Positions 3,521 through 35,000 of a stretch of 64,000 bases of DNA are shown here, one piece after another. The position numbers and the translations under genes are program-made. The number at the start of each line of letters is the position of its first letter. Within the stretch, counting starts at the first letter, position 1. The DNA is taken from positions 124,001 through 188,000 of the IMG/VR virus record IMGVR_UViG_3300047548_001236; one strand, 5' to 3'. The notes under the pieces are model-generated. The model made no database searches, was not told the DNA's origin, and worked only from the letters and a program-made list of their open reading frames with translations.

Positions 3521-3551
3521 CATAAATACAACAAAACAGAAGGCACGTTAA

Positions 3552-19289: not shown

Positions 19290-19402
19290 ACAGAAGAATT
19301 CTATCATATTTTGTGAGAGGTATCTCATCATACATCCAGTTATGGTGACGGACAACGGAAATCTCAACGCATGATAAATAACAATAAACAAGAAGAGTGG
19401 AC

Positions 19403-19747
19403 ATGACAGCAAGAGCCAACCTCTACATAGATCAAGGAACAGACTTTTCCGTCGACTTGGATATCTTCTCAGACGACGGTGAAGACTTGCCAATCTCGAA
19501 TTACACGTTTCAGGGAGATGTGAAGAAGGTATTCTCCACATCTGGACCTGTATTTTCATTCGATGTTGTATACGTTCCTAACTCGGTAAACAAAGTCGAA
19601 ATCTCACTAGGGGCTAATACATCCGCCGACATCGATCCTGGTAAGTACCAGTATGACATTGTCATGACGTCTCCATCCAACGTCAGGACAAAGATACTAG
19701 AGGGGCTTGTGTTTATCGTAGCCACGATGACAGATACAGGTGCGTAA
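19403..19747 (+). CDS. Small structural protein (BppU N-terminal-like, MTARANLYIDQGTDF)
   Basis: ANLxIDQGxDF...GKYQYDIV...ILEG pattern common in T4-like fibre clusters. GATAAATA at 19373-19380 and an RBS lie upstream. Confidence 0.6.
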   Translation: MTARANLYIDQGTDFSVDLDIFSDDGEDLPISNYTFQGDVKKVFSTSGPVFSFDVVYVPNSVNKVEISLGANTSADIDPGKYQYDIVMTSPSNVRTKILEGLVFIVATMTDTGA

Positions 19748-19975
19748 ATGAAAGTTGTCGTTAATCCCAAGAACAACTTGACGGCTACTGTACAGGGTAA
19801 GAATTCTGTACTCGTCAACCAGTCGGGTCAGGTGATCCGTAGGTTGAGCGATTTGGCTGACGTTGATTTGACGGGTCTAGAAGATGGTTCTCTGTTGATA
19901 TATAGCACAACATCAGAAAAATTTGAAGCATCAAGATTACTAGAAAAACAAAACATTAACGGAGGACATTTCTGA
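19748..19975 (+). CDS. Small structural protein
   Basis: RLSDLADVD...DGSLLIY...INGGHF, a fibre-associated motif. Tightly coupled to neighbours. Confidence 0.6.
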   Translation: MKVVVNPKNNLTATVQGKNSVLVNQSGQVIRRLSDLADVDLTGLEDGSLLIYSTTSEKFEASRLLEKQNINGGHF

Positions 19976-22854
19976 TGGCATCAACAATCAGAATTAAAAG
20001 GTCGGGAAGTACAGTTTCGCCAACGACTCTCGCGTCGGGCGAACTTGCATACTCCTGGGCAGCAGGAGCCGGGGGTAAACTATACCTAGGTACTGGAAGT
20101 GAAATCATTGCAGGTCAGGCACCTAACATCGATGTCATCGGTGGTAAGTTCTTCACTGACATGCTGGACCATACGGCTGGTACGCTAACAGCAAGCTCGG
20201 CAATTATTGTCGATGCAAATAGCAAAATTAATCAGCTGTTCGTCGATAACATCTCTGTCGACGGTAACACAATCACGACAACAGACCTGAACGGTAACTT
20301 GGTATTCAATACCAACGGAACGGGTGTATTTGACTTCTCGGGAAAGAGACTGACAAATCTCGCCGCTCCAGTTAATAGTGGTGACGCCGTCACACTAGGA
20401 TATCTGACGACTTCCTTTTCTAGCGCTCTCAACATAACGGGCGATACTGGCTCTGATTCAATATCGCTATTGTCTGAAACGCTAGACTTTAACGGTGGTA
20501 CAGGAATCTCTACTGCTGTCACGGCAAACACGGTAACGTTCAATCTGACCAATACCGGTGTAGCGGCTGGATCGTATGGATCTGCGACAGCAATTCCAAC
20601 ATTCACCGTCAACGCTCAAGGCCGTCTGACTGCAGCCGCTAACGTCAGCATTGCTATTCCTTCGACGCAGATCACTGATTTCACTGAGGCAGTGCAAGAC
20701 GTTGCTGGCGGAATGGTTAGCGGATCTACCCAAAATGGTATTTCTGTCACCTACGACGACAACACCGGTAAACTGAACTTTGACGTTAATGATCCAGTAA
20801 TTACGCTGTCGGGTGACGTTGCTGGTTCTGCGACAATGACCAATCTTGGTAACGTTACTATCACGACAACAATCCAAGCCAACTCCGTTGCTCTGGGTGT
20901 CGATACAACTGGTAACTATGTTGCCAGCCTGACGCAAGGGACAGGAGTATTCATCACAGGTGGTACTGGCGAAGGTTCTACTCCAACGATTGCAATTGGG
21001 CAAGACGTATCACCAACCGCAAACGTCGTGTTTGCTGGTGTTAACGTAACTGGTTCAATGTTGATTGACGGAAACCTGACTGTTTCAGGTAACACGTTCG
21101 TTGTCTCAACACAAACACTCGCTGTCCAAGACAACTTGATTTATTTGAACGAGGCGTCCACTGAAACTATCATCAACGCTGTAGGTGATGGGGATGATGT
21201 CGTTTATACCGTTTCAGGTGTCAATACGTTCAAAACTGGACAAAGTGTCACTGTCACGGGCGTTTCACCTTCGCAATATAACGTCAACAATGCTATCATC
21301 GCATTTTCTAACACCACAGCTTTCTCGGTTGCAAGTACAGCGACGGGAACATACGTGTCTGGTGGTACTGCATTCGCAAGAACAGCAGCAAACCCTGATC
21401 TTGGTTTTGTAGGTGGTTACGATGATGGAACCTACGCACATGCCGGTTTCTTTAGAGATGCGACCGACAACCGTTTCAAGGTGTTCACTGGTTATACTCT
21501 CGAACCAGAAGTTTTCATTGATACAGCAGATCCGTCGTTCAAACTTGCAGATATGCAAGCAAACACGTTCTACGGCGCTCTGTCTGGTAATGCATCTAGC
21601 GCATCGAAGCTGGAAACAGCTAGAACCATTTCACTCGGAGGAGATCTCAGCGGATCGACCTCGTTTGACGGTTCGACCAACGTTACGATCACAGCGTCCA
21701 TAAACGCCAACACGATCACCAACGCTGACATTGCTTCCAACGCTGCGATTGCGATCACGAAGCTGGCCGCTTCAACGATTTCGGGAATCTCCCTTGGCAA
21801 CAACCTGAACTCTGTAACGTTTAACAACAGCGGAACGGGAGCTGCTTCCGGTTCTACGTATAACGGTAGCACAGCCGTAACAATTTCACACAACACCATT
21901 GGCGCATCGCCTTTGGCAGGTTCGTCTTCGATAACAACAGTCGGTACGATCACTTCTGGTACATGGAACGGTTCGATTATCAGTCCGACGTATGGTGGCA
22001 CTGGTGTAAACAACGGTTCCAACACTCTTACCATCAACACTGCAAACGTCGCATTTACTGCTGCGGCTGGTGGCTCCTCATTAACACTGCCTGCAACTGG
22101 CACACTTGCTACGCTTGAAGGTAACGAAACGTTTACCGGGCAGAAGGCATTCAGCAGCGCCATAACCATGTCGACCACGACAGGAACCTTGTCGCTTGGT
22201 ACAAGCCAAACGACCGGCGTGTTCACCATGGGTGGCGTTTCTCAGACAGGTACGATCACGCTTGGACGTTCCACGGTTACTCAGACTGTTGACATCGCAG
22301 TTGGTGCAACGTCTACGGGCAACACCAAGACTGTCAACATCGGTACAAATGGAACTGCTGGATCCACGACCAACATCAACATCGGTTCGACCGCTGGCGG
22401 TACGACCGCAATCAGCAGCCCAACACTGACTGCAAACAACATTACTGCATCTGGAACCATAACAGGGACTCTTAGTGGCAACGCTACAACAGCATCTCGT
22501 CTGCAAACTGCACGTACGATTGCTCTGGCCGGAGATGTTGCAGGTTCTGTGTCGTTTGATGGATCGGCCAACGTTTCGATCACAACAACGATTCAGCCAA
22601 ACTCAGTTGCTCTGGGCACAGATACCACAGGCGACTATGTAGCGTTTGTTGCCAACACAGCTGGTTCGGGTGTTCTGGTTACAGGAACGGCTGGTGAAGG
22701 TGCAACCTTCACTGTATCTGGTATCAACGCAACGTTGACTGTCAAGGGTGTGGCATCGTTTGGCGGTTATGCTGACGACGCAAATACAGTGCGACAGTTC
22801 GCTGTGACAGGCGGAGACGTTTCGATAATTAACCTTGACGGCGGTTCGTTCTAA
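19975..22854 (+). CDS. Long tail fibre-like protein
   Basis: N-terminal IRIKRS...LASGELAYS. T/G/S/N-rich, with internal repeats (ITLSGDVAGS, ISLGGDLSGS, IALAGDVAGS). Ends DGGSF. Confidence 0.75.
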   Translation: MASTIRIKRSGSTVSPTTLASGELAYSWAAGAGGKLYLGTGSEIIAGQAPNIDVIGGKFFTDMLDHTAGTLTASSAIIVDANSKINQLFVDNISVDGNTITTTDLNGNLVFNTNGTGVFDFSGKRLTNLAAPVNSGDAVTLGYLTTSFSSALNITGDTGSDSISLLSETLDFNGGTGISTAVTANTVTFNLTNTGVAAGSYGSATAIPTFTVNAQGRLTAAANVSIAIPSTQITDFTEAVQDVAGGMVSGSTQNGISVTYDDNTGKLNFDVNDPVITLSGDVAGSATMTNLGNVTITTTIQANSVALGVDTTGNYVASLTQGTGVFITGGTGEGSTPTIAIGQDVSPTANVVFAGVNVTGSMLIDGNLTVSGNTFVVSTQTLAVQDNLIYLNEASTETIINAVGDGDDVVYTVSGVNTFKTGQSVTVTGVSPSQYNVNNAIIAFSNTTAFSVASTATGTYVSGGTAFARTAANPDLGFVGGYDDGTYAHAGFFRDATDNRFKVFTGYTLEPEVFIDTADPSFKLADMQANTFYGALSGNASSASKLETARTISLGGDLSGSTSFDGSTNVTITASINANTITNADIASNAAIAITKLAASTISGISLGNNLNSVTFNNSGTGAASGSTYNGSTAVTISHNTIGASPLAGSSSITTVGTITSGTWNGSIISPTYGGTGVNNGSNTLTINTANVAFTAAAGGSSLTLPATGTLATLEGNETFTGQKAFSSAITMSTTTGTLSLGTSQTTGVFTMGGVSQTGTITLGRSTVTQTVDIAVGATSTGNTKTVNIGTNGTAGSTTNINIGSTAGGTTAISSPTLTANNITASGTITGTLSGNATTASRLQTARTIALAGDVAGSVSFDGSANVSITTTIQPNSVALGTDTTGDYVAFVANTAGSGVLVTGTAGEGATFTVSGINATLTVKGVASFGGYADDANTVRQFAVTGGDVSIINLDGGSF

Positions 22855-22865
22855 GGAGCAAGCAA

Positions 22866-23177
22866 ATGGCGATAGTATACACCTGGAAGATACTTCAAAT
22901 GGATAGAAACGTAGCTGACGACGGTGTTGTCGTTGCCCATTGGAGCTGCTTAGGTAAAGACGAAGTAACGGAAAATACAGACAGGGTGTACGGTTCTGTA
23001 TCGTTCACCCCAAATCCTGAAAGTCCCGATTTCATCCCATACGAAAACCTCACAGAAGAAATTGTTCTAGGATGGTTGTGGAACGGTAAAATCGACAAGC
23101 AGGAATATGAAAATGTTGTTGCTGCAACAATCCAAACGCTGAACAACCCTCCAACCGTATCAGGGCTCCCCTGGTAA
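22866..23177 (+). CDS. Putative tail fibre assembly/accessory protein
   Basis: 103 aa, YTWKI...FIPYENLTEEIVLGWL...GLPW. AAGGAG RBS. Lies directly after a fibre gene. Confidence 0.55.
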   Translation: MAIVYTWKILQMDRNVADDGVVVAHWSCLGKDEVTENTDRVYGSVSFTPNPESPDFIPYENLTEEIVLGWLWNGKIDKQEYENVVAATIQTLNNPPTVSGLPW

Positions 23178-23239: not shown

Positions 23240-24511
23240 ATGACGGATACACTTATCAAACTGCGTAGAAGCGCAGTTCCTGGAAAAATACCATCAGATG
23301 CACAACTGCAGCTGGGTGAGGTCGCCATCAACACATATGATGGTAAGATGTTCTTCAAGCAATCGTCGACGTCGAACACAATCCTCCAAGTCGCAACAAC
23401 GTCTCTAAATTTAAGCGATTTTGCAAGCACCACCTCTGCACAGCTTGCTAGTATCATCAGCGATGAGATCGGTACTGGATCTCTCGTTTTTTCAAATGCA
23501 CCCACGCTAGTAACACCTGTCATTAACGGTAACACAACATTCGACAGTGGAACGCTGTTTATTGATTCGGTCAATAATAGAGTCGGTGTTGGAACTATAT
23601 CTCCCACACAACAATTTGAAGCGACTACCGGTAAATTTTCCAACGTCATCCTTGGTACAGACAGCGCTGATGCAAGCAAACGGTTGTCGATATTTTATGA
23701 TCCTGGTGTTCCCGGTGCAGTAATAGACGCTCCCAGCAACAGATTATTGATTCGTACGTTCGGTTCTGAAAGAATGAGAGTCGAGCAGACCGGATTCGTT
23801 GGAATAGGTAACACGGCACCGTCTGAAAGACTTCATGTTGACGGTAATATCAGACTTTCGGGAGCTGTTGTTGATTATGTCGGTTCTAAAGGAACGCTAG
23901 GACAGGTCCTCACATCTGACGGTTCAAAATCATACTGGGCTGACCCAACTGGCGGTGGTAGCGGTGGTATTGCTACAGCTTCACAATCAATTGTTCGCGA
24001 TATATTTACTGGCAACTCTGCTGCTTCGAGCTACACTCTTTCTACTACACCAATAGCAGAACGTTTTGTTATAGTTACCATAAACGGTATTGTTCAGCAA
24101 GATGCTGCATATAGTGTTGCAGGGACTTCGCTTGTTTTCGATGAGCCGCTTGCAAACACAGACGTGGTCGAGGCAAGAACGTTTGTTCCATACAACCCAT
24201 TTATGACGGATGCGTCTGCGACATTTGCCAACACATCGCCTAGTCAAGTTTTAGATACCTTTGACTCAACTTTGTATAGAACAGCTAAGTACCTGGTACA
24301 AATCGCCAACACGTCTTCCTATCAAGCGGCTGAGGTGTTGTTGATTCACGATGGTTCACAGGTATTCATTACTGAATATGCTCAACTGGCAACAGGAACG
24401 TCTCTTGGTGTAATCGACGCCGACATATCAGGTGGAAATGTCAGACTGCTTGTCAACCCATCATTTCCAAACGTCACGGCAAAATCAATCCGTTATAGCA
24501 TAGGTGTATGA
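23240..24511 (+). CDS. Tail fibre-like protein
   Basis: IKLRRSAVPGKIP...GEVAINTYDGK N-terminus, VGIGNTAPSERLHV repeats, and a YRTAKYLVQ...EVLLIHDG C-terminal domain. Confidence 0.75.
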   Translation: MTDTLIKLRRSAVPGKIPSDAQLQLGEVAINTYDGKMFFKQSSTSNTILQVATTSLNLSDFASTTSAQLASIISDEIGTGSLVFSNAPTLVTPVINGNTTFDSGTLFIDSVNNRVGVGTISPTQQFEATTGKFSNVILGTDSADASKRLSIFYDPGVPGAVIDAPSNRLLIRTFGSERMRVEQTGFVGIGNTAPSERLHVDGNIRLSGAVVDYVGSKGTLGQVLTSDGSKSYWADPTGGGSGGIATASQSIVRDIFTGNSAASSYTLSTTPIAERFVIVTINGIVQQDAAYSVAGTSLVFDEPLANTDVVEARTFVPYNPFMTDASATFANTSPSQVLDTFDSTLYRTAKYLVQIANTSSYQAAEVLLIHDGSQVFITEYAQLATGTSLGVIDADISGGNVRLLVNPSFPNVTAKSIRYSIGV

Positions 24512-24512
24512 C

Positions 24513-25484
24513 ATGACTACAAAAGTTAAACTAAGCAACTTGTCTCAAGAAGTGCTCGCAGGAGTTGGAGGTGGATCTGGCGGAAACGGAACATCTTCTG
24601 TAGACTTCCATAATATCGGCGGTGGCGTTGAAGTTACACACCGCTACATCGGAGCATATGACGCTTGTTTTTGGGATGCTACAGACGGGCTTTATAAAAG
24701 CGGGTTAAACTTAGATAATGCTACTAGTTTATTCAATACTGCTGAAGATCGACTAGCAAGCGTAAGTGGTATTTACCCTATTGTTGGCTTAACAAGAAAC
24801 GAAGCAAGGTTGATGGCAGCAAATAACGGGACAGGATGGAGACAGTTAGATTTTACACTAGCATCTGCCATTCAGCTACTTTATCTCGTAGAGTATCAAA
24901 CATTCTTTAGTCAAAATGTGTTAGGAGCAGGTAACACTAATGGAAGTTATATAGCAAGCAGTAGCAACCAAACAGACAGTCCACACACTATAGCAGGCGC
25001 TGGAAATGTGTTGGGTAACAGCAGTACCAATATTACAACAGGCGCAGGTGTAAATGCTAAACCTGGTACAAGTTTTATGAAGTATCGTGGAATCGAGAAC
25101 TTTTACGGTAATTGTTGGAATTGGGTTGACGGTCTAAACATTAATATAGGGACAGCCGGTACAGCATTCTATACCAACAATAGAGCAGATTTTATTGATG
25201 ACGTTTCAACAAATATGATTCTGTTAGCAAACAATATTGCAACCTCTTCTGGATTTATTCGCAATATTAATACAGGCAATCTGGGATTCTTACCGACTGA
25301 CACTGTGGGTGCGTCAAGTACAACTTATATAACTGATCAAGCATTTTTGACAACTTCATTAAACCGTGTCGCCCATCTCGGTGGTCTTGCGAATTCTGGT
25401 GTGGATGCTGGGGTTTTCTGCTGGGATCTGTCTAATGATTCGTCGCTTCGGCTTCGGTGTTTCGGTGCACGCGCCTGCTTCTAA
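24513..25484 (+). CDS. DGR target protein 1 (C-type lectin/FGE-like adhesin domain, Mtd-like)
   Basis: GIENFYGNCWNWVDG motif and a C-terminal VR (LGG...AGVF.W.L....R.R.FGARACF). Start at 24513 preferred because of the AGGTG RBS. Confidence 0.9.
   Translation: MTTKVKLSNLSQEVLAGVGGGSGGNGTSSVDFHNIGGGVEVTHRYIGAYDACFWDATDGLYKSGLNLDNATSLFNTAEDRLASVSGIYPIVGLTRNEARLMAANNGTGWRQLDFTLASAIQLLYLVEYQTFFSQNVLGAGNTNGSYIASSSNQTDSPHTIAGAGNVLGNSSTNITTGAGVNAKPGTSFMKYRGIENFYGNCWNWVDGLNINIGTAGTAFYTNNRADFIDDVSTNMILLANNIATSSGFIRNINTGNLGFLPTDTVGASSTTYITDQAFLTTSLNRVAHLGGLANSGVDAGVFCWDLSNDSSLRLRCFGARACF
25369..25475 (+). repeat. Variable repeat VR1
   Basis: Aligns ungapped to 27111-27217 over 107 bp with 19 mismatches, 18 of them at TR adenines (the exception is GTC to GTT). 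Confidence 0.95.
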
Positions 25485-25533
25485 ACAGATGCAGACAACG
25501 ATCTGAAAGATCGTTGTCCGTGTATAGAAGCAG
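25475..25533 (+). other. IMH region plus nested hairpin after VR1
   Basis: Inner stem GACAACGATCT-GAA-AGATCGTTGTC (25494-25518). Outer stem CTGCTTCTA (25475-25483) pairs with TAGAAGCAG (25525-25533). Confidence 0.85.
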
Positions 25534-25552
25534 ATAAATAAAAGGAAAACAA

Positions 25553-25804
25553 ATGAAAAGCTACAGTCTACATCAACAACCAACATACAGCCCAAGTGGC
25601 AAGGAACTTAGGATTAATTTCAACCATCAATTAGTTGAAACAAGTAATGAATGGGAAGAAACATCGAGTATGCGGGTTTGTGATCAGATTCTGTTGTCTG
25701 TTACTGCTACTAGAGAACAGATTATAGACGCAATCAACCTAATCGATCCATCACAAGCCGAAACATTAGCAGACGGTTGGTTTAGACAAGAGGAAAAATT
25801 ATGA
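25553..25804 (+). CDS. Small protein between the DGR targets, homologous to 28374-28610
   Basis: GATAAATA (25533-25540) and AAGGA RBS upstream. LRINFNHQLVE resembles IRVHWNHEQVE. Confidence 0.75.
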   Translation: MKSYSLHQQPTYSPSGKELRINFNHQLVETSNEWEETSSMRVCDQILLSVTATREQIIDAINLIDPSQAETLADGWFRQEEKL

Positions 25805-26991
25805 ATGTAAGAATAGGCCCAGAAAATCGAACCCTTCTTAATCTAGGTTGGAATCAAGTAAACGATACCTATACACCAACAACAACTAGAAATACAGTGA
25901 GTGCAGTTCATCTCAGAATGCGCCGTTGTTTGCTCAATTTGAATGGTACAGTCAACTACTATCTTGATCCAAATGATAGTACCAAGAAAGCTGACGGGAC
26001 ACCTTCTGTTCTCACGGGTGCTGATGGATATGTGATGGTGGAAATACCCAAGTTTTCATTCAAATACACATACGCCGCAGGGCAGTATTTCTGGGAAGTA
26101 GTGATCGGTAAACGAGATGGCTACACACTTCACCCGGCATTCATAAAGGATGGGGTTGAAGTAGAGAACCGTTATATCGGTGCCTATGATGCCTGCGTAT
26201 GGGATGCGACTACCGATACATATATCAGCGGTCTAAACTTAGATAACTCAGATACATTGATTGACATTGCTGTTGATAGATTGGCAAGTGTATCCGGTGT
26301 TTATCCAATGGTTGGTCAGACTCGAGCAAGATTTAGATCACTTGCTGATAACAATGGTACGGGTTGGAGGCAGTTAGATTTTTGGCTAGCGAGCGCTGTT
26401 CAGCTCCTCTATCTGATTGAGTATGATACTTTTAAAAGCCAGCAAGTGTTAGGATTGGGTAATGTCAGTTCATCATATTTGACGTCTAGCAGCAATCAGT
26501 CGGATAGCCCTCACACTATCGCTGGTGCATCAAATGCGTTAGGTAATCGATCTACCAACGGAACGCAACCAAGCGCTGGTGCAAGACCTGGGATTGCTTA
26601 TATGAGTTATCGTGGAATCGAGAACTTTTACGGTAATTGTTGGAATTGGGTTGACGGGTTTAACCTGATTAATTTTGTAGCTTGGGTCACTAACAATAGA
26701 ACAAACTTTGTCGATGATGTAACAACAAATATGACTAATATCGGTACACTCGCAAGCACATCTGGATTTGCAACAGATATTGTCAATTATGGTGGTACAT
26801 TTTTACCGAGTACCGTGGGTGGGTCATCTACTACACGATTGACAGACCAACTATTTGTATCTTCTGGTAACCGTGTCGCCCGTCTCGGTGGTAGTGCGAA
26901 TCTTGGTGTGGATGCTGGGGTCTTCTGCTGGGCTCTGAATGATGATTCGTCGTATCGGAATCGGCCGATCGGTGCGCGCGCCTGCTTCTAA
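25801..26991 (+). CDS. DGR target protein 2 (C-type lectin/FGE-like adhesin domain)
   Basis: VMVEIPKF, LHPAF, YIGAYDA and GIENFYGNCWNWVDG motifs, with a C-terminal VR. Confidence 0.9.
   Translation: MNVRIGPENRTLLNLGWNQVNDTYTPTTTRNTVSAVHLRMRRCLLNLNGTVNYYLDPNDSTKKADGTPSVLTGADGYVMVEIPKFSFKYTYAAGQYFWEVVIGKRDGYTLHPAFIKDGVEVENRYIGAYDACVWDATTDTYISGLNLDNSDTLIDIAVDRLASVSGVYPMVGQTRARFRSLADNNGTGWRQLDFWLASAVQLLYLIEYDTFKSQQVLGLGNVSSSYLTSSSNQSDSPHTIAGASNALGNRSTNGTQPSAGARPGIAYMSYRGIENFYGNCWNWVDGFNLINFVAWVTNNRTNFVDDVTTNMTNIGTLASTSGFATDIVNYGGTFLPSTVGGSSTTRLTDQLFVSSGNRVARLGGSANLGVDAGVFCWALNDDSSYRNRPIGARACF
26876..26982 (+). repeat. Variable repeat VR2
   Basis: Aligns ungapped to the TR over 107 bp with 16 mismatches, 15 at TR adenines (the exception is the T of AAT to CCG). 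Confidence 0.95.
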
Positions 26992-27040
26992 ACAGATGCA
27001 GTCAACGATCTGAAAGATCGTTGTCCGTGTATAGAAGCAG
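26982..27040 (+). other. IMH region plus nested hairpin after VR2
   Basis: Same element as after VR1 with a single substitution. Inner stem CAACGATCT-GAA-AGATCGTTG (27003-27023). Confidence 0.85.
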
Positions 27041-27048
27041 TATAAATA
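27041..27048 (+). promoter_or_regulatory. T4-type late promoter upstream of TR/RT
   Basis: Exact TATAAATA in the intergenic gap. Confidence 0.8.
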
Positions 27049-27073
27049 AAACATGTGAAAGGAGAATACACTA

Positions 27074-27331
27074 ATGATTAGAATAGGGGTGCAGTATCAA
27101 TGCCCAGTATTCACCCATCTCGGTGGTAATGCGAATAATGGTGTGAATGCTGGGGTCTTCTACTGGAATCTGAATAATGATTCGTCGAATCGGAATCGGA
27201 ATATCGGTGCACACGCCAATCCCCAAAGCAATGCTGTAAAGATACTGACTCCTCACCTCTTGGTGAAATCTGTCGCCACAAAAAGTTTGGTAGGGAAACC
27301 GAAGAACTTGGCTGGGGGATGCAGGAAATGA
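27074..27331 (+). CDS. TR-containing ORF (85 aa), possibly translated and coupled to the RT
   Basis: AAGGAG RBS about 9 nt upstream. The TR is in frame. Its TGA (27329-27331) overlaps the RT ATG (27328-27330). Confidence 0.5.
   Translation: MIRIGVQYQCPVFTHLGGNANNGVNAGVFYWNLNNDSSNRNRNIGAHANPQSNAVKILTPHLLVKSVATKSLVGKPKNLAGGCRK
27111..27217 (+). repeat. DGR template repeat (TR)
   Basis: Contains 27 adenines, including 10 in-frame AAT codons. It is the adenine-retaining copy of VR1 and VR2, and diverges after ...CACGCC (IMH*). Confidence 0.95.
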
Positions 27332-28377
27332 AACGATACGGGAATCTATTTGAAAAAATCTGCGACTTAGATAATCTTCTACTTGCACATCAGAACGCTA
27401 GATTAGGAAAATCTAGCTATAAAGAAGTTCAAATGGTAGACAAAAATCCACGTTATTATGCTGAAAAACTAAGACATCTTTTACAATCTAAGACGTTTAC
27501 AACAAGTAAGTATCAAATATTCTGGAAAGATTGTGGAACTAAACAGAGATACATCTACAAGTTACCTTACTGGCCAGATAGAATAGTTCAACATGCTCTG
27601 ATGCAAATTGTAGAACCGATATTCACAAGGACTTTAATCCGTGATACTTTCCAGTCGATAAAAGAGAGAGGTACACACGATTGTAGAAAACGGCTTCAAA
27701 AAGCAATAGAAAATATCAAAGAAGACTCATATGTTTTAAACTTTGACATTAAGCAGTTTTACCCATCTGTCGACAATCAACTACTAAAAGTGTTAGTGAG
27801 ACGTAAAATCAAATGTAAAGATACACTTTGGTTGCTTGATGATATTATTGACTCAACAAAAGGTCTCCCTGTAGGAAACTACAGTAGCCAGATTTTAGGT
27901 AATTTATACTTATCTGCTATGGATCACTATGCAAAAGAAACTCTAGGAATCAAACACTATTTTAGATATTGCGATGATATAGTTATTCTCGCTGACACAA
28001 AAGAGCAATGTAATTTATATAAGAAAAAACTATTTAATATAGTCGATCGGTTAAAGTTAACTGTGAAAAGCAACTGGCAGGTTTTCCCGTTTTCAACAAG
28101 AGCGGTAGATTTTATTGGTTGGGTATTTTCGAAAAGCCGGGTGCGGCTTAGAAAGAGAACTGCGCGTAGATTCACAAATAAAGTTATGATGATAAAGAAG
28201 AATCACAGGCGAATATCACCGGCTCATGCTGTATGCTCTATTATGTCCTACTGGGGTCAGTTTAAACACATTAATTCAAAAAGACTCTGGAAACAGCACA
28301 TAGATAAAGAATTTATGAATAAGACAGATAAATTTTTCGATAAACAAAATCTATTTAGAGAGGTGATCTGCAAATGA
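27328..28377 (+). CDS. DGR reverse transcriptase
   Basis: MKRYGNLFEKI start, DRIVQHAL, FDIKQFYPSVD, the DGR-type GLPVGNYSSQ motif, catalytic RYCDD and DFIGW. No maturase or endonuclease domain. Confidence 0.95.
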   Translation: MKRYGNLFEKICDLDNLLLAHQNARLGKSSYKEVQMVDKNPRYYAEKLRHLLQSKTFTTSKYQIFWKDCGTKQRYIYKLPYWPDRIVQHALMQIVEPIFTRTLIRDTFQSIKERGTHDCRKRLQKAIENIKEDSYVLNFDIKQFYPSVDNQLLKVLVRRKIKCKDTLWLLDDIIDSTKGLPVGNYSSQILGNLYLSAMDHYAKETLGIKHYFRYCDDIVILADTKEQCNLYKKKLFNIVDRLKLTVKSNWQVFPFSTRAVDFIGWVFSKSRVRLRKRTARRFTNKVMMIKKNHRRISPAHAVCSIMSYWGQFKHINSKRLWKQHIDKEFMNKTDKFFDKQNLFREVICK

Positions 28378-28610
28378 TTAAAGTTCATTCAGACAACAAG
28401 CTAGAAACATTTCAAATACTAGGACCAATCATCCGAGTTCATTGGAACCACGAACAAGTTGAACAAGAAGAAATGGATAATGGTAAAAGAGTGACTTGGA
28501 TTGCCGATGAGATAGTTGTACCGTCAGATATCTCTACAGAAGAGTTGATAAAAACACTCGAGCAATACAATGCTCCTGTGAATGAAATAATGCAAGAGTG
28601 GAATAAATAA
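28374..28610 (+). CDS. Small protein coupled to the RT, homologous to 25553-25804
   Basis: ATGA overlap with the RT stop. IRVHWNHEQVE...ADEIVV...STEELIKTL...W pattern. Confidence 0.75.
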   Translation: MIKVHSDNKLETFQILGPIIRVHWNHEQVEQEEMDNGKRVTWIADEIVVPSDISTEELIKTLEQYNAPVNEIMQEWNK

Positions 28611-28639: not shown

Positions 28640-31600
28640 ATGGCAAACGATAAAAGATTTGTAGCCAAGAATGGTCTAACTACTCAAAATATTTTGTTTG
28701 TAGATAATATCCAGTCTGCAAATAACACCGTTTTGATAGAAATGAAACCAACGAACGAGTTAGTCGTCGCTACAGATGAGCAAGCACTGGTTGTGTCAAA
28801 TACACCAGGTTCTATCCTCACAGTCAACGATTCTACTGGCATACCTACTATTCAGGTAACCGATTACGGTAATATTCTTGTTGGTGATCTTGTAGATAAC
28901 GGTGTAGATAAAATCCAAGCTAGTGGGAGTTTGTTTTCTGAAACCATAAAAACTTCCAAACTATCATTCAAGACTCAGCAAGGTTCAGATGTAATATCAT
29001 CTGAACTAACTAGTAACACTGAAGTTACGTTTATTGGTGATAGCAACGATATACTGTCAATGGGATTAGACCCTAATAGTTCACTTTTTACAGTCAACGA
29101 TATTTCTGGTGTGCCTTCGATTGAAGTTGTTGACGATGGTACTGTAAGATTAGCAGAAATTATCGGGAATGTCGGCGTTGGATTAGCGTCGCCGTCAGAA
29201 AAATTGCATGTGCAAGGAAATGTAAGAGCAACGTCGTTGATGGCTGCTAACGGTTCTGCTGCTTCCCCAGCCTTTGATTTTGCTGCTGACCCTAACACTG
29301 GTATGTTTTCTGCTGGAGCTGATACGATTGGGTTCTCTACGAACGGCACGATAGCGGCAGCTATTACATCGACAGGTAACCTGCGTCTGTTCAACACTGC
29401 CGGAACCTTCTACACGGAAATCTCCAACCAACCGACAGCTAATAACACTCTGACACTACCGGCCACAGGCAACGTGACCCTTGTGTCGGGAACGATGGTT
29501 CCAACTACTGGTACTGGCGCGACTGGAACGTGGGGTATCTCAGTAACTGGTAATGCGGCAACTGCAACCACATTACAAACCTCAAGAAATATCAATGGTA
29601 CACTTTTCAACGGTTCTGCTGATATTACGATACCGCGTGTAAGAGCAGCTGACGATCGTACTGTCGCACCGTCGGATTTCTTAACAGCGTATACTACTTT
29701 TGGATTTGGTTCATGGAATAACAATAATACCTCCCCCTATAGCGATTATTTAGTACTTCGCAACTATACAGACTCTACTGGCGGAAATGATAATATGCTA
29801 TCGTTCCGTAAAGATACGTTAGGCATAAGACTGTGGCAAGCACCATATGGCAATAACTCACCTTTCTCAACTTTTAAAGATGTAGCTTGGACAGACGGTA
29901 CTAATGCAACAGGCACTTGGAACATTAGCGTTTCTACGGCAAACAATGCTACCAATCTCAACGGGCAATCAGCTTCATATTATCTTGATTGGACCAATGT
30001 AACCAATAAGCCAGATCCTGTAATAACCCTGGCGGGCGATCTTACTGGTTCTGTTACTTTGACTGATTTAGGATCAGGCACACTCACTGCAACAATTGCC
30101 GCTAATTCAGTTGCTCTTGGCGCAGATACTACAGGTAATTATGTTGCTTCCCTTATACAGGGAACTGGTGTAACTATTACAAATAATACGGGTGAATCAG
30201 CTACACCGACGATTGCTATTGGACAAGACGTAAGTATATCTGCAAATGTCCAATTTGCAAATATGATTGTTTCTGGTGATCTAACAGTTAACGGTACGAC
30301 TACAACAATCAACACCACAAATCTTACCACAAAAGATACACTGATTGAACTTAACAGTGGAGCAAATACTAGTATCAATGATTCTGGTATTCTAATCAAT
30401 CGAGGATCCACTGGGGCTAATGCTTTTATTGGTTGGAATGAAACAACAGATAAATTTGTTGTAGGTACGACAACCGCAACTGGGAATACAACAGGTAACC
30501 TAGCTGTAACAGCTGGAACCTTAGTAGCTGCGTCATTTGAAGGTTCTTTGAGTGGTAATGCAACCACCTCAACTACCGCCAATAATATCGCTGGTGGAGT
30601 CGCTGGAGGGGTCCCTTATCAAAGTGGAGTTGGAACAACCGCTATAACAGCCGCAGGTACTGCCGGCCAGGTTTTTGTTTCTGCGGGTTCAAGTGCCCCA
30701 TCATGGCAGACGTTGACTCTTGAGAATATTCCTGATGCGTGGGTTAAACGTAGTGTCAAAGCAGCCACGACTGCAAATATTACTTTATCGGGTGCACAAA
30801 CTATCGACGGTGTTTCGGTAGTCGCAGGGGATAGAGTTCTTGTAAAGAACCAAACTGCTGCCGCTGAAAATGGTATCTATGTCGTAGCAGCGGGTGCTTG
30901 GACAAGAGCAGCTGATGCTAATATTTCATCAGAATTAGCAGCAGCAACTGTAGGTATTGACCAAGGTACTACAAACGGCGGTAAAACTTATGATACCGAT
31001 TTTAAGGGCACTGATACTCTTGGTACAACTGCAATGTCTTGGTACAGAGTATTAGATGCTGCTTCTATAGGTTCCGAAGTTCAAGCATATGATGCCGGTC
31101 TGCAATCCATTGCAGGTCTAACCACCGCGGCAGATCGTATGATATATACAACTGCAGCAGATACATATGCTGTTACTACATTAACAGCTGCTGGTAGAGC
31201 AATTCTAGACGATGCTGATGCTGCAGCCCAGCGCACTACACTTGGACTTGGAACGGCCAATAACGTCACCTTTGCAACTGTAACAGCTACAACATCTTTG
31301 ACTTCTCCATTACTGACTAATGCTGGTACTCTATCACTTTCAGCTACTGGTTCAAACGTCATTGCTGCATCAACAAATGGTTCAGAACGTTTACGTATTA
31401 CAGACACCGGTAGAGTAGGTATTGGCACTACAATTCCTACAACATCACTTCATGTAACTGCGACTCCCCCAGCAAGCATCCCTACTGCTGGGGCTGCTTC
31501 TTCACACGTAGCCATCGGAACAAATTCTTATGGGACGTCGATTGGTACCCTATCAAGCGGCAGAGGTTATATCCAGCAACAAAGATTTGATGGTAATACG

Positions 31601-31999
31601 GCTGTTTATGATCTTTTGCTCAATCCGAACGGCGGTAACGTAGGTATTGGCACAACAAATCCTTCGACAATTCTTCACGCAAATGGCGAAATAACTGCTA
31701 CGGACTTTAATACAACATCAGACCTAAATGTCAAAGAAAATATTGAAATTATACCAGATGCTGTTGTAAAAGTTTCTCAAATAAATGGTGTGACATTTAA
31801 TTTTAAAGCCGATAATACCAAGCAGAGACACGCAGGTGTTATTGCACAGGATGTAGAAAAGGTACTTCCTGAAGCCGTTAAAGAAATGTCGGATGGAATT
31901 AAACACGTTGCTTACGGAAACTTGATAGGTCTGCTTGTAGAAGCCATAAAAGATCAACAAAAACAAATAGATGAGCTAAAAGCTCTTATCAATAAATAA
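28640..31999 (+). CDS. Long tail fibre with C-terminal S74-like chaperone
   Basis: MANDKRFVAKNGL N-terminus, a TITLSGAQTIDGV...GDRVLVKNQ module, and C-terminal SDLNVKENI...GVIAQDVE...VAYGNL. Confidence 0.85.
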   Translation: MANDKRFVAKNGLTTQNILFVDNIQSANNTVLIEMKPTNELVVATDEQALVVSNTPGSILTVNDSTGIPTIQVTDYGNILVGDLVDNGVDKIQASGSLFSETIKTSKLSFKTQQGSDVISSELTSNTEVTFIGDSNDILSMGLDPNSSLFTVNDISGVPSIEVVDDGTVRLAEIIGNVGVGLASPSEKLHVQGNVRATSLMAANGSAASPAFDFAADPNTGMFSAGADTIGFSTNGTIAAAITSTGNLRLFNTAGTFYTEISNQPTANNTLTLPATGNVTLVSGTMVPTTGTGATGTWGISVTGNAATATTLQTSRNINGTLFNGSADITIPRVRAADDRTVAPSDFLTAYTTFGFGSWNNNNTSPYSDYLVLRNYTDSTGGNDNMLSFRKDTLGIRLWQAPYGNNSPFSTFKDVAWTDGTNATGTWNISVSTANNATNLNGQSASYYLDWTNVTNKPDPVITLAGDLTGSVTLTDLGSGTLTATIAANSVALGADTTGNYVASLIQGTGVTITNNTGESATPTIAIGQDVSISANVQFANMIVSGDLTVNGTTTTINTTNLTTKDTLIELNSGANTSINDSGILINRGSTGANAFIGWNETTDKFVVGTTTATGNTTGNLAVTAGTLVAASFEGSLSGNATTSTTANNIAGGVAGGVPYQSGVGTTAITAAGTAGQVFVSAGSSAPSWQTLTLENIPDAWVKRSVKAATTANITLSGAQTIDGVSVVAGDRVLVKNQTAAAENGIYVVAAGAWTRAADANISSELAAATVGIDQGTTNGGKTYDTDFKGTDTLGTTAMSWYRVLDAASIGSEVQAYDAGLQSIAGLTTAADRMIYTTAADTYAVTTLTAAGRAILDDADAAAQRTTLGLGTANNVTFATVTATTSLTSPLLTNAGTLSLSATGSNVIAASTNGSERLRITDTGRVGIGTTIPTTSLHVTATPPASIPTAGAASSHVAIGTNSYGTSIGTLSSGRGYIQQQRFDGNTAVYDLLLNPNGGNVGIGTTNPSTILHANGEITATDFNTTSDLNVKENIEIIPDAVVKVSQINGVTFNFKADNTKQRHAGVIAQDVEKVLPEAVKEMSDGIKHVAYGNLIGLLVEAIKDQQKQIDELKALINK

Positions 32000-32033: not shown

Positions 32034-35000
32034 ATGGCAATTAAGATTCAAGGCACAACAATACTTGACGATAACAGGAATTTGTTGTCGGGAAACACAA
32101 TCACAGCAACCTCGTTTGTGGGGCCGCTGGCCGGTAATGCTAACACTGTCACCAATGGCGTGTACACCATTGGTGACCAATCAATTGGCGGCGTAAAGAC
32201 ATTCACGGGTATTCCAGCTTTTAATGGTGGTGTTAGTGGTACAAGTGCCCCATTCACAGTTGATAGTACAACAGTTGTCACAAACCTGAATGCGGATTTA
32301 CTTGATGGACAAAATCTTGTGAGCACAGCTTCAACAGTAAATACTGTAGCTGGGCGCGATGGCGCAGGTGATATATATGCAAGGTTGATCAGAACAACGT
32401 ATACGGAAGATGGTGGCATTACATCGACGGCAGGCGTGCATATGCGAGTCAACGCGAATACTGACAACTATTCGCGCATAGTTACAGGCACGGGATTTGT
32501 AAACTGGCTTGAAAATTATGATGGCGCAGGATCAGGGCTTGACGCAGACTTACTTGATGGTGTACAGGGTGCAAGCTACCTCAGAAGCGATGCAGATGAC
32601 ACAGCATCGGGTCTAATAGCATTTGATAGAGGTGCTGCAAACTATACAGACGCTTTTGTAATACGAAGCGGAGCAGTAGCATCTGGGAATCCCGGACTAT
32701 TCTTCAAAAAGGCAGACTCAAATACGGTCCACATCACAATGTGGAACGGTTCTACAACGCAAGGGTCTTTGAGAGTAACTTCTACGACGACTGAAATAGA
32801 CTCATCAACTGCCATTTTCGGCGATGATGGTACTAACGGATACCTACAGCTAAACAGAGGAAATACAACAAATCCCGGTTACATTTCATTCCATACACCA
32901 AATAATGTAAGACGTTCATACATTGGATGGAACACTTCCAATAGAACCTCATTTGTTGCGGAAAATGGATGGGCCTGGAGCTTTACCGGTAATGTTAGTT
33001 TTGATAGCACTACTTTACATGTAGACTCCACTAACAACAGAGTTGGTATAGGGACACTAACACCAGCAGTATCATTAGATGTGTCTGGTAATATACGAGG
33101 CAGATCAACATTTGAGCTTGTCCCTGTTGGATCTGAAGATGCAGCAGTAGCAATTGGACAAGGTCGTAGTGCTAACGGATATGCGTATATCGATATGATA
33201 GGAGACACAACGTACACAGACTACGGGGTCCGTATAATACGAGGCAACACTGGTGCAAATGCATCTACTCAACTGATCCACAGAGGTACAGGGGGTTTCA
33301 GCTTCGAGGCTCTGGATGCGGGTCACCTGACATTCAAAACAACTAATATAGAGCGTGTGCGCATTAATAGCGCGGGCAATGTAGGTGTAGGTATTGATTC
33401 ACCGTCCGAAAGACTTCACGTTGAAGGTACTGCTCGTGCACTATCATTCGCATCAGCAAACGGCTCTGCCTCTACTCCTTCTTTCGATTTTGTCGCTGAT
33501 CCTAATACCGGTATGTATCTCGCTGCTGCTGACACAATTGGATTCGCTACAAATGGCACAACAGCTGCCCAATTTACGTCCACAGGCAATTTGAGACTTT
33601 TCAATTCCGCAGGCACTTTCTACACAGAACTAAGCAACTCTCCAACATCAAACACAACAGTGACGATCCCCGATATCAACGGGACAATGTCTATCATTAG
33701 ATCGGCAGCAACTGCTGGATATTTTGATACAAGCACGACAACGCCGACCGGCACGACACGTCTTAACTATGGTGGATATTTCTACCCAACGTTTATTAAC
33801 TTAGCCGGATCTGGTGATACTACTACTGCTGCCACACACTACTTTGTTGAAACCGGTACCGATGGATTCGTCAGACCAAAGACGCTTGCAAACGTTAGAA
33901 CTGAAATTGTGACAGGTGCTGCAATCAATGCCGGGCTTGGGACTGCATCGCCAGCAGCTATACTACACCCAACTCTCATCGACGCGGGTTCGAGCACAGC
34001 ACCAGCTGTACTTAGAATTGATCACCAAACAACTGGTACACCAACATCTGGTATTGGTGTTAGCATGCAATTCGGGGTAGAAACTGCAAGTACTCCAAAT
34101 CTGGAAGTGATAGGCGAAATCGCTGCAAGAACAACATCGGTATCTCCTGGCTTAGAAGACTCAGAATTGATATTCTACGGTATGCAAGGAGGTGTTCAAG
34201 ATGAGCGCTTTAGATCTAGATCAACTGGATTTACCATTGGTGGTATAGCACAGCCGCAAGCAACTTTGCATGTCCGTAATGCCATTGGTGGTGAATTTCA
34301 AGCTCCGACGCCACAACTCCGTCTTGAACAGAAATACATATCAGGCCGTGAGATTGGCGAAGGCCCCGCAATTGAATTTGCTGTGGAAGTGTCGGCGGGC
34401 AACATAAAACCAAGTGGACAAATTGCATCAGTAGCAAACGACCTTACACCTGGATCCGAAGTTTTCGATATGACATTCAGTACTCCGGGTACTGGTGCTC
34501 TACCATCCGAGAGTATGAGGATTACTGGAGGTGGTCGTGTACTCATAAATTCGACAGAAGCATATGGCAACATAGGTAGAGTACCTCGGCTTCAAGTTCA
34601 CACCGCAGGATTCATACGTGATTCACGTATTGGATCATTCAACTGGATTGACAACAACACAGGCGCAGGCATTGAATTTTATAAATCAAGATCAGGTACT
34701 AGAGGTACATTCGGAGTACTAACTTCTGGTGATATAATTGGCGAGTTACAATTTTATGGTGTTGATAGTGGGAATACATCCTTTTCAGAGGCGACGCGTA
34801 TTGTAACTCATGTCGATGCTGCACCAACGACAACAGGGGTACCAAGCCGTCTTTCATTCTTCACATCAGATACCACAGGTACACTTGCAGAGCGTATGAG
34901 AATTACATCTGGTGCAGAAGTCTGGATTGCTGGTACTACTGACCGCGGAGCATACAACCTTCAATGTAACGGCACCGGTGTTTGGGGTGCTGGTGCTTAT

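What the first reader, a model, noticed from the sequence alone, without database searches (positions are those of the whole stretch)
25553..28610. No avd gene, but two homologous approximately 80-aa proteins flank the cassette
No ORF resembling the helical Avd accessory protein lies near TR or RT. Instead 25553-25804 and 28374-28610 align (LRINFNHQLVE/IRVHWNHEQVE, CDQILL/ADEIVV, TREQIIDAI/STEELIKTL, terminal W). One is coupled to target 2 and the other to the RT. They could be one chaperone or adaptor per adhesin, or a new class of DGR accessory factor.
Basis: partly seen in the sequence, partly recalled or inferred. Interest (0 to 1): 0.6.

Follow-up and report, generated by a model that had tools for sequence, protein, structure and literature searches.

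The report
Small partner proteins of DGR tail adhesins
The two ~80-residue proteins are real paralogues, but each belongs to the tail adhesin gene upstream of it, with or without a reverse transcriptase nearby, so they are most likely fibre chaperones or caps rather than a new retroelement accessory factor.

Summary
ORFs 25553-25804 (P0001) and 28374-28610 (P0002) are homologous (profile-profile probability 98.9%, E 1.7e-17). No Avd (PF05635) match exists anywhere in the 283-kb phage genome. The cassette is a genuine two-target DGR with adenine-specific TR/VR differences.

The family has 79 clusters among 1.84 billion representatives. It is always encoded just downstream of one type of tail protein with a C-type-lectin fold like TaqVP and Mtd. 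In 39 non-redundant loci anchored on that tail protein, the small gene is present in 23 of 24 with an RT and 14 of 15 without (Fisher p = 1). RT-less carriers include a 93%-complete genome. On the family tree the RT-less state is scattered.

The proteins are acidic (pI about 4.6) and fold as four strands plus two helices, not an Avd-like helical bundle. Relatives carry C-terminal Phage_tail_APC or DUF4376 tail-fibre-chaperone domains. One of these, g30 of the cultured Yersinia phage fEV-1, was not detected in virions although its fibre was.

Verdict: one cognate chaperone or cap per adhesin, in an accessory-less DGR of a known architecture. The new-accessory-factor idea is not supported, and the chaperone function itself is inferred.

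The parts
24504..25484 (+). DGR target 1 (P0005, 326 aa), a tail protein with a C-terminal C-type-lectin/FGE-like variable domain
   Evidence: phrog_5302 'tail protein', E 5.5e-50. It is 64% identical to target 2 over the last 287 aa and 72% identical to the L001 target. A model of the family's C-terminal domain matches TaqVP 5vf4 at E 7e-10.
25369..25475 (+). VR1
   Evidence: Against TR 27111-27217 there are 18 mismatches at template adenines and 1 other.
25475..25533 (+). Target stop codon followed by a conserved hairpin, the likely DGR target-recognition element after VR1
   Evidence: The flank is 88% identical to the flank of VR2. Folding 25468-25538 as DNA gives -18.9 kcal/mol, z -6.4. 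This element accounts for the 68-nt gap before P0001.
25553..25804 (+). P0001, 83 aa, pI 4.7: small partner protein, cognate to target 1
   Evidence: establish the ORF and its homology. The AF2 model has pLDDT 90.6 with four strands and two helices. Its nearest relative, P0010, sits after the RT in L001, whose target is the closest relative of target 1.
25801..26991 (+). DGR target 2 (P0003, 396 aa)
   Evidence: phrog_5302, E 3.9e-84. The model of residues 110-396 has pLDDT 78 and matches TaqVP, Mtd and FGE folds.
26876..26982 (+). VR2
   Evidence: Against TR there are 15 mismatches at template adenines and 1 other.
26982..27040 (+). Target stop codon followed by a conserved hairpin after VR2
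   Evidence: Folding 26975-27045 as DNA gives -16 kcal/mol, z -5.3.
27111..27217 (+). Template repeat (TR), 107 nt with 27 adenines
27218..27318 (+). TR-to-RT spacer carrying a conserved element. The ORF 27074-27331 that runs across TR and this spacer is probably not a gene.
   Evidence: Across related loci the conserved tail upstream of the RT start sits in different frames relative to TR.
27319..28377 (+). DGR reverse transcriptase (P0004, 352 aa)
   Evidence: RVT_1, E 2.5e-15; phrog_1423, E 2e-99. It is the only RT in the genome. It contains V-G-N-Y-S-S-Q, which fits the DGR-type [LIV]GxxxSQ motif (read; the motif itself is from my own knowledge).
28374..28610 (+). P0002, 78 aa, pI 4.6: small partner protein, cognate to target 2, separated from it by the inserted TR-RT
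   Evidence: Its relatives P0012 and P0013 occupy the same post-RT position.

Best explanation
P0001 and P0002 are paralogous members of an unnamed family of small acidic phage proteins with four beta-strands followed by two helices. The invariant genomic partner of this family is the gene immediately upstream: a tail receptor-binding protein whose C-terminal domain has the C-type-lectin/FGE fold of DGR variable proteins.

The conserved unit is [lectin-fold adhesin]-[small protein]. Where the adhesin is a DGR target, the TR-RT pair sits between the two genes, so the small gene ends up overlapping the RT stop codon. Where there is no DGR, the small gene follows the adhesin directly. In this window P0001 therefore serves target 1 and P0002 serves target 2.

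The most likely function is that of a stand-alone version of the fibre-binding N-terminal module of modular tail-fibre assembly proteins. Such a protein would bind its cognate adhesin during folding and oligomerisation, or transiently cap its tip, and would not be retained in the virion. The DGR itself is of the known accessory-less target-TR-RT architecture and does not need these proteins for retrohoming.

Shown: homology, fold class, acidity, synteny, independence from the RT, and domain fusions in relatives. Inferred: physical binding to the adhesin and chaperone activity.
For: Homology and a real family:
- Alignment of ten members.
- hhalign probability 98.9%, E 1.7e-17.
- 79 representative clusters at E<=1e-3.

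Synteny:
- Of 54 copies examined, 36 follow an RT, 26 of them with a 4-nt overlap; 13 follow the adhesin directly, 8 of them 10-17 nt downstream; 5 have no recognisable gene upstream.
- In the adhesin-anchored sample, loci with at least 2 kb downstream were RT+S+ 32, RT-S+ 17, RT-S- 1, RT+S- 1.
- After de-duplication the counts are 23, 14, 1 and 1, Fisher p = 1.0. The single RT+S- locus has a weak divergent member.

Independence from the RT:
- No RVT_1 match in the whole records of 5 RT-less carriers, one of them 93% complete. The positive control in the window's own genome was found.
- On the family tree the RT-less state needs 8 changes, at least 4 of them forced by well-supported branches. 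Most RT-less copies do not have longer branches; L034 and the inter-target copy of L022 do.

One copy per adhesin:
- The window and L022 both have target1(VR1)-small-target2(VR2)-TR-RT-small.
- P0001 groups with the L001 copy (support 100/99), whose adhesin is the closest relative of target 1 at 72% identity. P0002 groups with the L003 and L004 copies, and the L004 adhesin is closest to target 2 at 68%.

Unlike Avd:
- The model has pLDDT 90.6 with four strands and two helices.
- pI is 4.1-5.5 for 52 of the 54 copies, against a basic Avd with pI 9.5 (PMC5758913).

Link to fibre chaperones:
- P0022 is the family domain plus PF16778 Phage_tail_APC (E 2.9e-18) and matches PHROG 'tail fiber assembly' families. 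It lies after the RT in a prophage DGR whose target is P0003-like.
- P0091 is the family domain plus DUF4376.
- Yersinia phage fEV-1 g30 has the family domain (E 5e-29) plus DUF4376 (E 6e-7), in the order g27 fibre, TR, g29 RT, g30.
- DUF4376 is the domain of the experimentally proven fibre chaperones V22 gp27 and A5 gp9 (PMC7289586, PMC10579305).
- A variable N-terminal fibre-binding domain plus a conserved C-terminal helical domain is the described Tfa architecture (PMC9608196).
- An ESM Atlas structural neighbour (TM 0.75) is a cluster in which 45% of members carry DUF4376.

Virion proteome: in fEV-1, g27 is particle-associated while g29 and g30 are not listed (PMC8309999 Table S2).

Setting: the adhesin fold matches TaqVP 5vf4 at E 7e-10, and the window region is a tail-fibre module.
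Against: - P0001 and P0002 themselves match no chaperone family in Pfam or PHROGs.
- They lack the conserved C-terminal Tfa or DUF4376 domain that their longer relatives carry.
- No solved structure resembles the model. The best Foldseek E is 0.11 and the best VIA Z is 4.5-4.9, and TfaMu is not among the matches.
- Only a few family members (3 seen) carry a recognised chaperone domain. Most long forms have C-terminal domains of unknown function (phrog_6034, 14311, 10241).
- Absence of fEV-1 g30 from the virion proteome is negative evidence for a distant long-form relative.
- The tight overlap with the RT stop codon in most DGR loci is compatible with co-expression with the RT.
- No binding has been demonstrated.
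Confidence: 0.62

Rival explanations
1. The small protein is a new DGR accessory factor that replaces Avd. It would bind the RT and/or the TR RNA and be required for mutagenic retrohoming. The second copy would be a relic of another cassette.
For: - No Avd (PF05635) match in this genome or in 5 related RT-bearing records, two of them at least 90% complete.
- The small gene overlaps the RT stop by 4 nt in 26 of the 36 post-RT copies, which suggests translational coupling.
- The closest relatives of P0001 are post-RT genes.
- One ESM Atlas structural neighbour is an RVT_1 cluster of 451 aa (TM 0.69).
Against: - The gene is kept next to the adhesin in 14 of 15 non-redundant RT-less loci and in records with no RT at all.
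- The RT-less state is scattered over the tree, mostly without acceleration.
- There is one copy per target, not per RT.
- The proteins are acidic and rich in beta-structure, unlike the basic helical Avd.
- No RT fusion appears among 79 sequence relatives, whose maximum length is 247 aa.
- Accessory-less DGRs are common, at 29% of the curated set (PMC5758913).
- The Atlas RVT_1 match may simply reflect a palm-like beta/alpha arrangement.
Confidence: 0.08
2. The small protein is a structural virion component. It would be a distal adaptor or tip subunit that stays bound to the lectin-fold adhesin in the mature particle and may take part in receptor binding, as T2 gp38 and TfaMu do, rather than a transient chaperone.
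For: It shows the same strict adjacency to the adhesin. Some fibre chaperones remain attached and contribute to binding (PMC10579305, PMC9608196).
Against: The fEV-1 homologue g30 was not detected among 33 particle-associated proteins, while the adhesin g27 was. The family is highly conserved at its N-terminus, which is not expected for a receptor-contacting tip.
Confidence: 0.2
3. The function is unrelated to either the adhesin or the DGR, for example a regulator, a lysis-timing factor or an anti-defence protein that merely hitch-hikes at the end of the tail-fibre operon.
For: There is no direct functional evidence. The fold has no solved relative. In fEV-1 the next gene downstream is a holin.
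Against: Adjacency to one specific adhesin family is conserved across very different phages: a 283-kb jumbo phage, 20-40-kb phages, a dwarf myovirus and a prophage. Duplication goes together with the adhesin. Relatives are fused to chaperone domains.
Confidence: 0.1

Closest known systems
Modular tail-fibre assembly proteins (Tfa of Mu, P2 and lambda; Pam3 gp25; Pfam Caudo_TAP and Phage_tail_APC)
   Same: - Encoded directly downstream of the receptor-binding protein, with one per fibre.
- Small and acidic.
- Four strands plus two helices recalls the published description of the TfaMu N-terminal domain, a four-stranded sheet packed against a pair of helices (PMC9608196).
- The relative P0022 has exactly the modular layout: the family domain followed by the conserved Tfa C-terminal domain.
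   Different: - P0001 and P0002 lack the conserved C-terminal helical domain that mediates trimerisation.
- They have no sequence match to any Tfa family.
- They have no significant structural match to solved chaperones.
DUF4376-type tail-fibre chaperones (Alteromonas phages V22 gp27 and A5 gp9)
   Same: - These are downstream-encoded intermolecular chaperones or transient caps for the fibre tip (PMC7289586, PMC10579305).
- The family members P0091 and fEV-1 g30 carry DUF4376 C-terminally.
- An Atlas structural neighbour cluster is 45% DUF4376.
   Different: The window's proteins are the N-terminal module only, without DUF4376. Their partner is a lectin-fold DGR-type adhesin, not the V22/A5 fibre.
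Avd, the DGR accessory variability determinant
   Same: Small size and location inside a DGR cassette, with gene overlap to the RT in most loci.
   Different: - Avd is a basic pentameric four-helix-bundle protein encoded upstream of TR that binds the RT (PMC5758913).
- These proteins are acidic and have a beta-sheet plus two helices.
- They lie downstream of the RT or of a target, and they persist without any RT.
Accessory-less DGRs (architecture A1, target-TR-RT, of Wu et al. 2018)
   Same: The window's cassette has a target followed by TR and RT with no avd, HRDC or MutS-like gene, as do 29% of curated DGRs.
   Different: It has two targets, each followed by a small partner gene. Whether that survey scored such a gene as a nested unrelated ORF or as a 'potential accessory gene' cannot be checked, because its supplements are not held.

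Membership tests
Avd (DGR accessory protein, PF05635-type) | Sequence match to the Avd / four-helix-bundle family | tested here: not met
   P0001 and P0002 have no Pfam hit at E<=1 except RRM_7 at 0.054. There is no PF05635 match in the whole genome.
Avd (DGR accessory protein, PF05635-type) | All-helical four-helix-bundle fold | tested here: not met
   The AF2 model (pLDDT 90.6) has strands at 2-5, 12-15, 18-31 and 37-49 and helices at 54-62 and 66-82.
Avd (DGR accessory protein, PF05635-type) | Strongly basic protein (mean pI 9.5) | tested here: not met
   pI is 4.7 and 4.6 for the window's proteins. The family range is 4.1-5.5 for 52 of 54 copies; the exceptions are L034 at 6.1 and the chimeric L030 at 9.5. 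The Avd value is from PMC5758913.
Avd (DGR accessory protein, PF05635-type) | Occurs only together with a DGR RT | tested here: not met
   14 of 15 non-redundant RT-less adhesin loci carry the small gene. Five whole records have no RVT_1 match.
Avd (DGR accessory protein, PF05635-type) | Binds the RT and is required for cDNA synthesis | not testable with these tools
   This needs biochemistry or a retrohoming assay.
Tail-fibre assembly / chaperone proteins (Tfa, Phage_tail_APC, DUF4376) | Gene immediately downstream of the receptor-binding protein gene | tested here: met
   The gap is 10-17 nt where no DGR intervenes. Otherwise the two genes are separated only by the VR hairpin or by TR-RT.
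Tail-fibre assembly / chaperone proteins (Tfa, Phage_tail_APC, DUF4376) | Conserved C-terminal chaperone domain (PF16778, PF02413 or PF14301) | tested here: not met
   The domain is absent from P0001 and P0002. It is present in the relatives P0022, P0091 and fEV-1 g30. The window's proteins are therefore not filed as members of these Pfam families.
Tail-fibre assembly / chaperone proteins (Tfa, Phage_tail_APC, DUF4376) | Variable N-terminal beta/alpha domain that binds the fibre | tested here: inconclusive
   The secondary-structure layout fits the published description. No significant structural match to solved chaperones was found, with best Z 4.9.
Tail-fibre assembly / chaperone proteins (Tfa, Phage_tail_APC, DUF4376) | Needed for folding or oligomerisation of the fibre, and often absent from virions | not testable with these tools
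   There is only indirect evidence: fEV-1 g30 is not among the particle-associated proteins while g27 is (PMC8309999 Table S2).
Diversity-generating retroelement (the cassette as a whole) | TR/VR pair differing almost only at template adenines, an RT, and a lectin-fold target with the VR at its 3' end followed by a hairpin | tested here: met
   Adenine versus other mismatches are 18 to 1 for VR1 and 15 to 1 for VR2. The RT is identified. Hairpins have z -6.4 and -5.3. The target fold matches TaqVP at E 7e-10.
Other reported DGR accessories (HRDC, MutS-like MSL, CH1) | HRDC or MutS_I domain, or similarity to the acidic 160-169-aa CH1 proteins | tested here: inconclusive
   No HRDC or MutS domain was found in Pfam. 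A relation between CH1 and the acidic long forms of this family could therefore not be tested.

The most novel reading that the evidence does not exclude
The family is a dedicated partner of hypervariable lectin-fold adhesins and also has a DGR-linked role. One possibility is that it holds or caps the invariant scaffold of the adhesin so that any of the very many DGR-generated tip variants still fold. Another is that it additionally assists the Avd-less RT with which it is translationally coupled. Either would make it a previously unrecognised functional component of a large clade of phage DGR cassettes.
Probability: 0.1. Interest if true: 0.7.

Novelty: new variant of a known kind. Interest (0 to 1): 0.35.

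Why it matters
For annotation: in this DGR clade the gene that overlaps the RT stop codon should not be called a DGR accessory. It belongs to the adhesin.

For biology: the work defines an uncharacterised, structurally confident small-protein family that accompanies TaqVP/Mtd-like phage adhesins in very different phages. These include a jumbo phage, small podo- or myovirus-sized genomes, a prophage and the cultured Yersinia phage fEV-1.

If the family is a chaperone or cap, it must cope with a binding tip that the DGR keeps rewriting. That is a concrete, testable question. It is also practically relevant for anyone who wants to express or engineer DGR-diversified receptor-binding proteins.

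Tried and rejected
- Complex prediction with target-2 residues 110-396 (alignment A6) and P0002 (alignment A5) gave no answer, with score 0.00 against a mark of 0.32. This is no evidence either way. The RT-P0002 pair could not be tried because only one job is allowed.
- Foldseek against PDB, VIA-align wide and the VIA second look gave no significant solved-structure relative. A PDB profile search also found nothing.
- Pfam and PHROGs returned nothing for P0001 or P0002 themselves.
- The search for related loci failed with the wide alignments A2 and A3, which have no conserved stretch. With A1 it found no relatives. Alignments A4, A5 and A6 worked.
- megablast of the cassette against GenBank phages found nothing. 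tblastn of P0002 and P0049 against the same collection also found nothing. The fEV-1 homologue was reached only through the adhesin.
- The protein-atlas search by features returned only unnamed clusters with scores below 0.9.
- The CH1 accessory proteins of Wu et al. could not be compared because no supplements are held.
- I considered and rejected the idea that ORF 27074-27331, which runs across TR, is the missing accessory. Its conserved tail sits in different frames relative to TR in related loci, which points to an RNA or DNA element rather than a protein.
- The tentaclin paper (PMC10743442) describes targets with an N-terminal lectin domain and is not this family.


Full report
**Setting.** The window is bases 124001-188000 of a 282,855-bp IMG/VR virus record that CheckV rates 100% complete. 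The region around the finding is a tail-fibre module. It holds large tail-fibre proteins at 19975-22854, 28640-31999 and 32034-35321, an L-shaped-tail-fibre-assembly-like gene at 19397-19747, and a fibre protein at 23240-24511.

**The retroelement.** Inside this module lies a complete diversity-generating retroelement.
- Target 1 is at 24504-25484 and target 2 at 25801-26991.
- The template repeat is at 27111-27217 and the reverse transcriptase at 27319-28377.
- TR differs from VR1 (25369-25475) at 18 template adenines and 1 other base. It differs from VR2 (26876-26982) at 15 adenines and 1 other base.
- Each VR is followed by a conserved strong hairpin, with z -6.4 and -5.3.
- A model of the target C-terminal domain (pLDDT 78) matches the Thermus DGR variable protein TaqVP at Foldseek E 7e-10, followed by Mtd and formylglycine-generating enzymes.
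- This is the only RT in the genome.

**The observation.** The two ORFs exist as described, and the quoted motifs are there.
- Pairwise BLASTP is weak, at 21% identity and E 2e-4.
- The close relatives of each protein align with each other end to end.
- Profile-profile comparison of the two subfamilies gives 98.9% probability and E 1.7e-17 over 76 columns. They are true paralogues.
- An AlphaFold model built from the alignment is confident, with pLDDT 90.6. It shows four beta-strands followed by two helices.
- The 4-nt overlaps of P0001 with the target-2 start and of P0002 with the RT stop are real.
- No PF05635 (Avd) match exists anywhere in the genome. None exists in five related RT-bearing phage records either, two of which are at least 90% complete.

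**What the family is.** A profile search of 1.84 billion representative proteins found 79 clusters at E<=1e-3, with lengths of 64-247 aa.
- The common core is the ~80-100-aa domain seen in the window.
- The shortest forms, like P0001 and P0002, consist of that domain alone.
- Longer forms add C-terminal domains.
- Neither the window's proteins nor the family profile match any solved structure or any Pfam or annotated PHROG family.

**Genomic context, the decisive evidence.** I collected loci in two ways: through the small protein and, independently, through the adhesin.
- In every informative locus the small gene lies on the same strand just downstream of a homologue of the window's targets.
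- It lies either directly after the adhesin, with a gap of 10-17 nt in 8 of the 13 such copies, or after an intervening TR-RT. In 26 of the 36 post-RT copies its start overlaps the RT stop by 4 nt.
- In the adhesin-anchored sample, loci with at least 2 kb of downstream sequence were RT+small+ 32, RT-small+ 17, RT-small- 1 and RT+small- 1.
- After clustering the adhesins at 90% identity the counts are 23, 14, 1 and 1, and Fisher's exact p is 1.0.
- The single RT+small- locus in fact has a weak divergent member two genes after the RT.
- Whole records of five RT-less carriers contain no RVT_1 match, and one of them is 93% complete. The same search finds the RT in the window's own genome.
- On a maximum-likelihood tree of the small proteins the 'directly after the adhesin' state is scattered. 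It needs 8 changes by parsimony, at least 4 of them forced by well-supported branches. Most RT-less copies are not on longer branches, although L034 and the inter-target copy of L022 are.

The family's constant partner is therefore the adhesin, and its presence does not depend on the retroelement.

**One copy per adhesin.** The only other two-target locus found, L022, has the same layout as the window: target1(VR1)-small-target2(VR2)-TR-RT-small.
- P0001's nearest relative is the post-RT protein of L001 (support 100/99). The L001 adhesin is the closest relative of target 1, at 72% identity against 57% to target 2.
- P0002 groups with the post-RT proteins of L003 and L004. The L004 adhesin is closest to target 2, at 68%.
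- Each small protein therefore travels with the adhesin upstream of it. P0001 belongs to target 1, not to target 2, whose start it happens to overlap.
- The 68-nt gap between target 1 and P0001 is filled by the VR1 hairpin.

**Why a chaperone or cap is the best functional guess.**
1. The position immediately downstream of the receptor-binding protein is the canonical place for intermolecular tail-fibre chaperones (PMC7289586).
2. Three relatives carry recognised chaperone domains C-terminal to the family domain.
   - P0022 has PF16778 Phage_tail_APC at E 2.9e-18 and matches several PHROG 'tail fiber assembly' families. It lies after the RT of a prophage DGR whose target is P0003-like.
   - P0091 has DUF4376.
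   - g30 of the cultured dwarf myovirus Yersinia phage fEV-1 has the family domain at E 5e-29 and DUF4376 at E 6e-7. The gene order there is g27 tail fibre, TR, g29 RT, g30.
   - DUF4376 is the domain of the experimentally proven chaperones or transient caps V22 gp27 and A5 gp9.
3. Tfa-type chaperones are described as modular, with a variable N-terminal domain that binds the fibre and a conserved C-terminal helical domain that trimerises (PMC9608196). The window's proteins look like the N-terminal module on its own.
4. In the published fEV-1 virion proteome the adhesin g27 is particle-associated, while g29 and g30 are not listed (PMC8309999 Table S2).
5. The proteins are acidic, with pI 4.1-5.5 for 52 of the 54 copies examined. 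Avd is basic and helical.

**What remains inferred.**
- No binding has been shown, and the one complex prediction allowed gave no answer.
- The short forms lack the conserved chaperone domain.
- Most long forms carry C-terminal domains of unknown function.
- The fold has no solved relative.
- A structural role in the virion cannot be excluded (confidence 0.2), nor can a DGR-linked second role (about 0.1).
- The tight coupling to the RT, and one ESM Atlas structural neighbour annotated as RVT_1, are the only hints in favour of the accessory-factor reading.

**Comparison with what is known.** The cassette is an ordinary accessory-less DGR. This is architecture A1 (TR-RT) of Wu et al., which accounts for 29% of curated DGRs, and a whole RT lineage lacks avd.
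- The small proteins fail every testable Avd criterion.
- They meet the positional criterion of tail-fibre chaperones but not the domain criterion. I therefore describe them as working like, but not being members of, the Tfa and DUF4376 families.
- They represent a new stand-alone variant of a known kind.
- A possible relation to the acidic CH1 'accessory' proteins of Wu et al. could not be tested.

**Verdict.** The 'chaperone or adaptor per adhesin' reading is supported, and the 'new class of DGR accessory factor' reading is not. Interest is moderate to low at 0.35. This is a tidy, testable new family tied to hypervariable adhesins, not a new retroelement component.

Noticed in passing
window 27074-27331: An 85-aa ORF runs through TR into the RT start, and gene callers predict it in related loci too. 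Across about 60 loci the conserved 'tail' just upstream of the RT start sits in different frames relative to TR. The conservation is therefore probably an RNA or DNA element, like the spacer of the BPP-1 DGR RNA, and not a protein.
   Followed up: partly
window 25468-25538 and 26975-27045: Nearly identical strong hairpins lie directly after both VRs, with -18.9 and -16 kcal/mol and z -6.4 and -5.3. This fits the hairpin or cruciform target-recognition element known from the Bordetella phage DGR.
   Followed up: partly
window 19397-19747 and 22866-23177: A 116-aa protein matches phrog_3304 'L-shaped tail fiber protein assembly' at E 1e-13. A 103-aa DUF7936 protein lies between fibre genes. The module therefore holds other small fibre-associated genes as well.
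   Followed up: no
L124 (Synechococcus phage S-EIVl, KJ410740.1) 2191-4702: A homologue of the target is followed by a 29-aa annotated ORF whose sequence resembles the N-terminus of the DGR RT. No intact RT and no small-family gene is present, so this looks like a decayed DGR.
   Followed up: no
L030 6818-7228: A 136-aa chimeric member keeps only the C-terminal two-thirds of the family domain (E 2e-28), fused to an unrelated basic N-terminus. No lectin-fold adhesin lies upstream. It is the one clear case of the domain outside its usual context.
   Followed up: partly
model of P0001 against the ESM Atlas: Structural neighbours with TM 0.67-0.76 include a 451-aa cluster that is 100% RVT_1 (mostly Bacteroidota) and a cluster in which 19% of members carry CBM_5_12. 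The RVT_1 hit could be an RT fusion or a chance palm-like match.
   Followed up: no
window 24504-28610 compared with L006-L123: The same adhesin-TR-RT-small module occurs in a 283-kb jumbo phage, in 20-40-kb phage genomes, in a prophage of a bacterial genome (GCA_040838435.1) and in the dwarf myovirus fEV-1. This implies horizontal exchange of the whole host-recognition cassette.
   Followed up: no
window 22580-22643 and 30084-30147: A 64-nt stretch is 75% identical between two different tail-fibre genes, which may be a shared fibre motif or a recombination seam.
   Followed up: no
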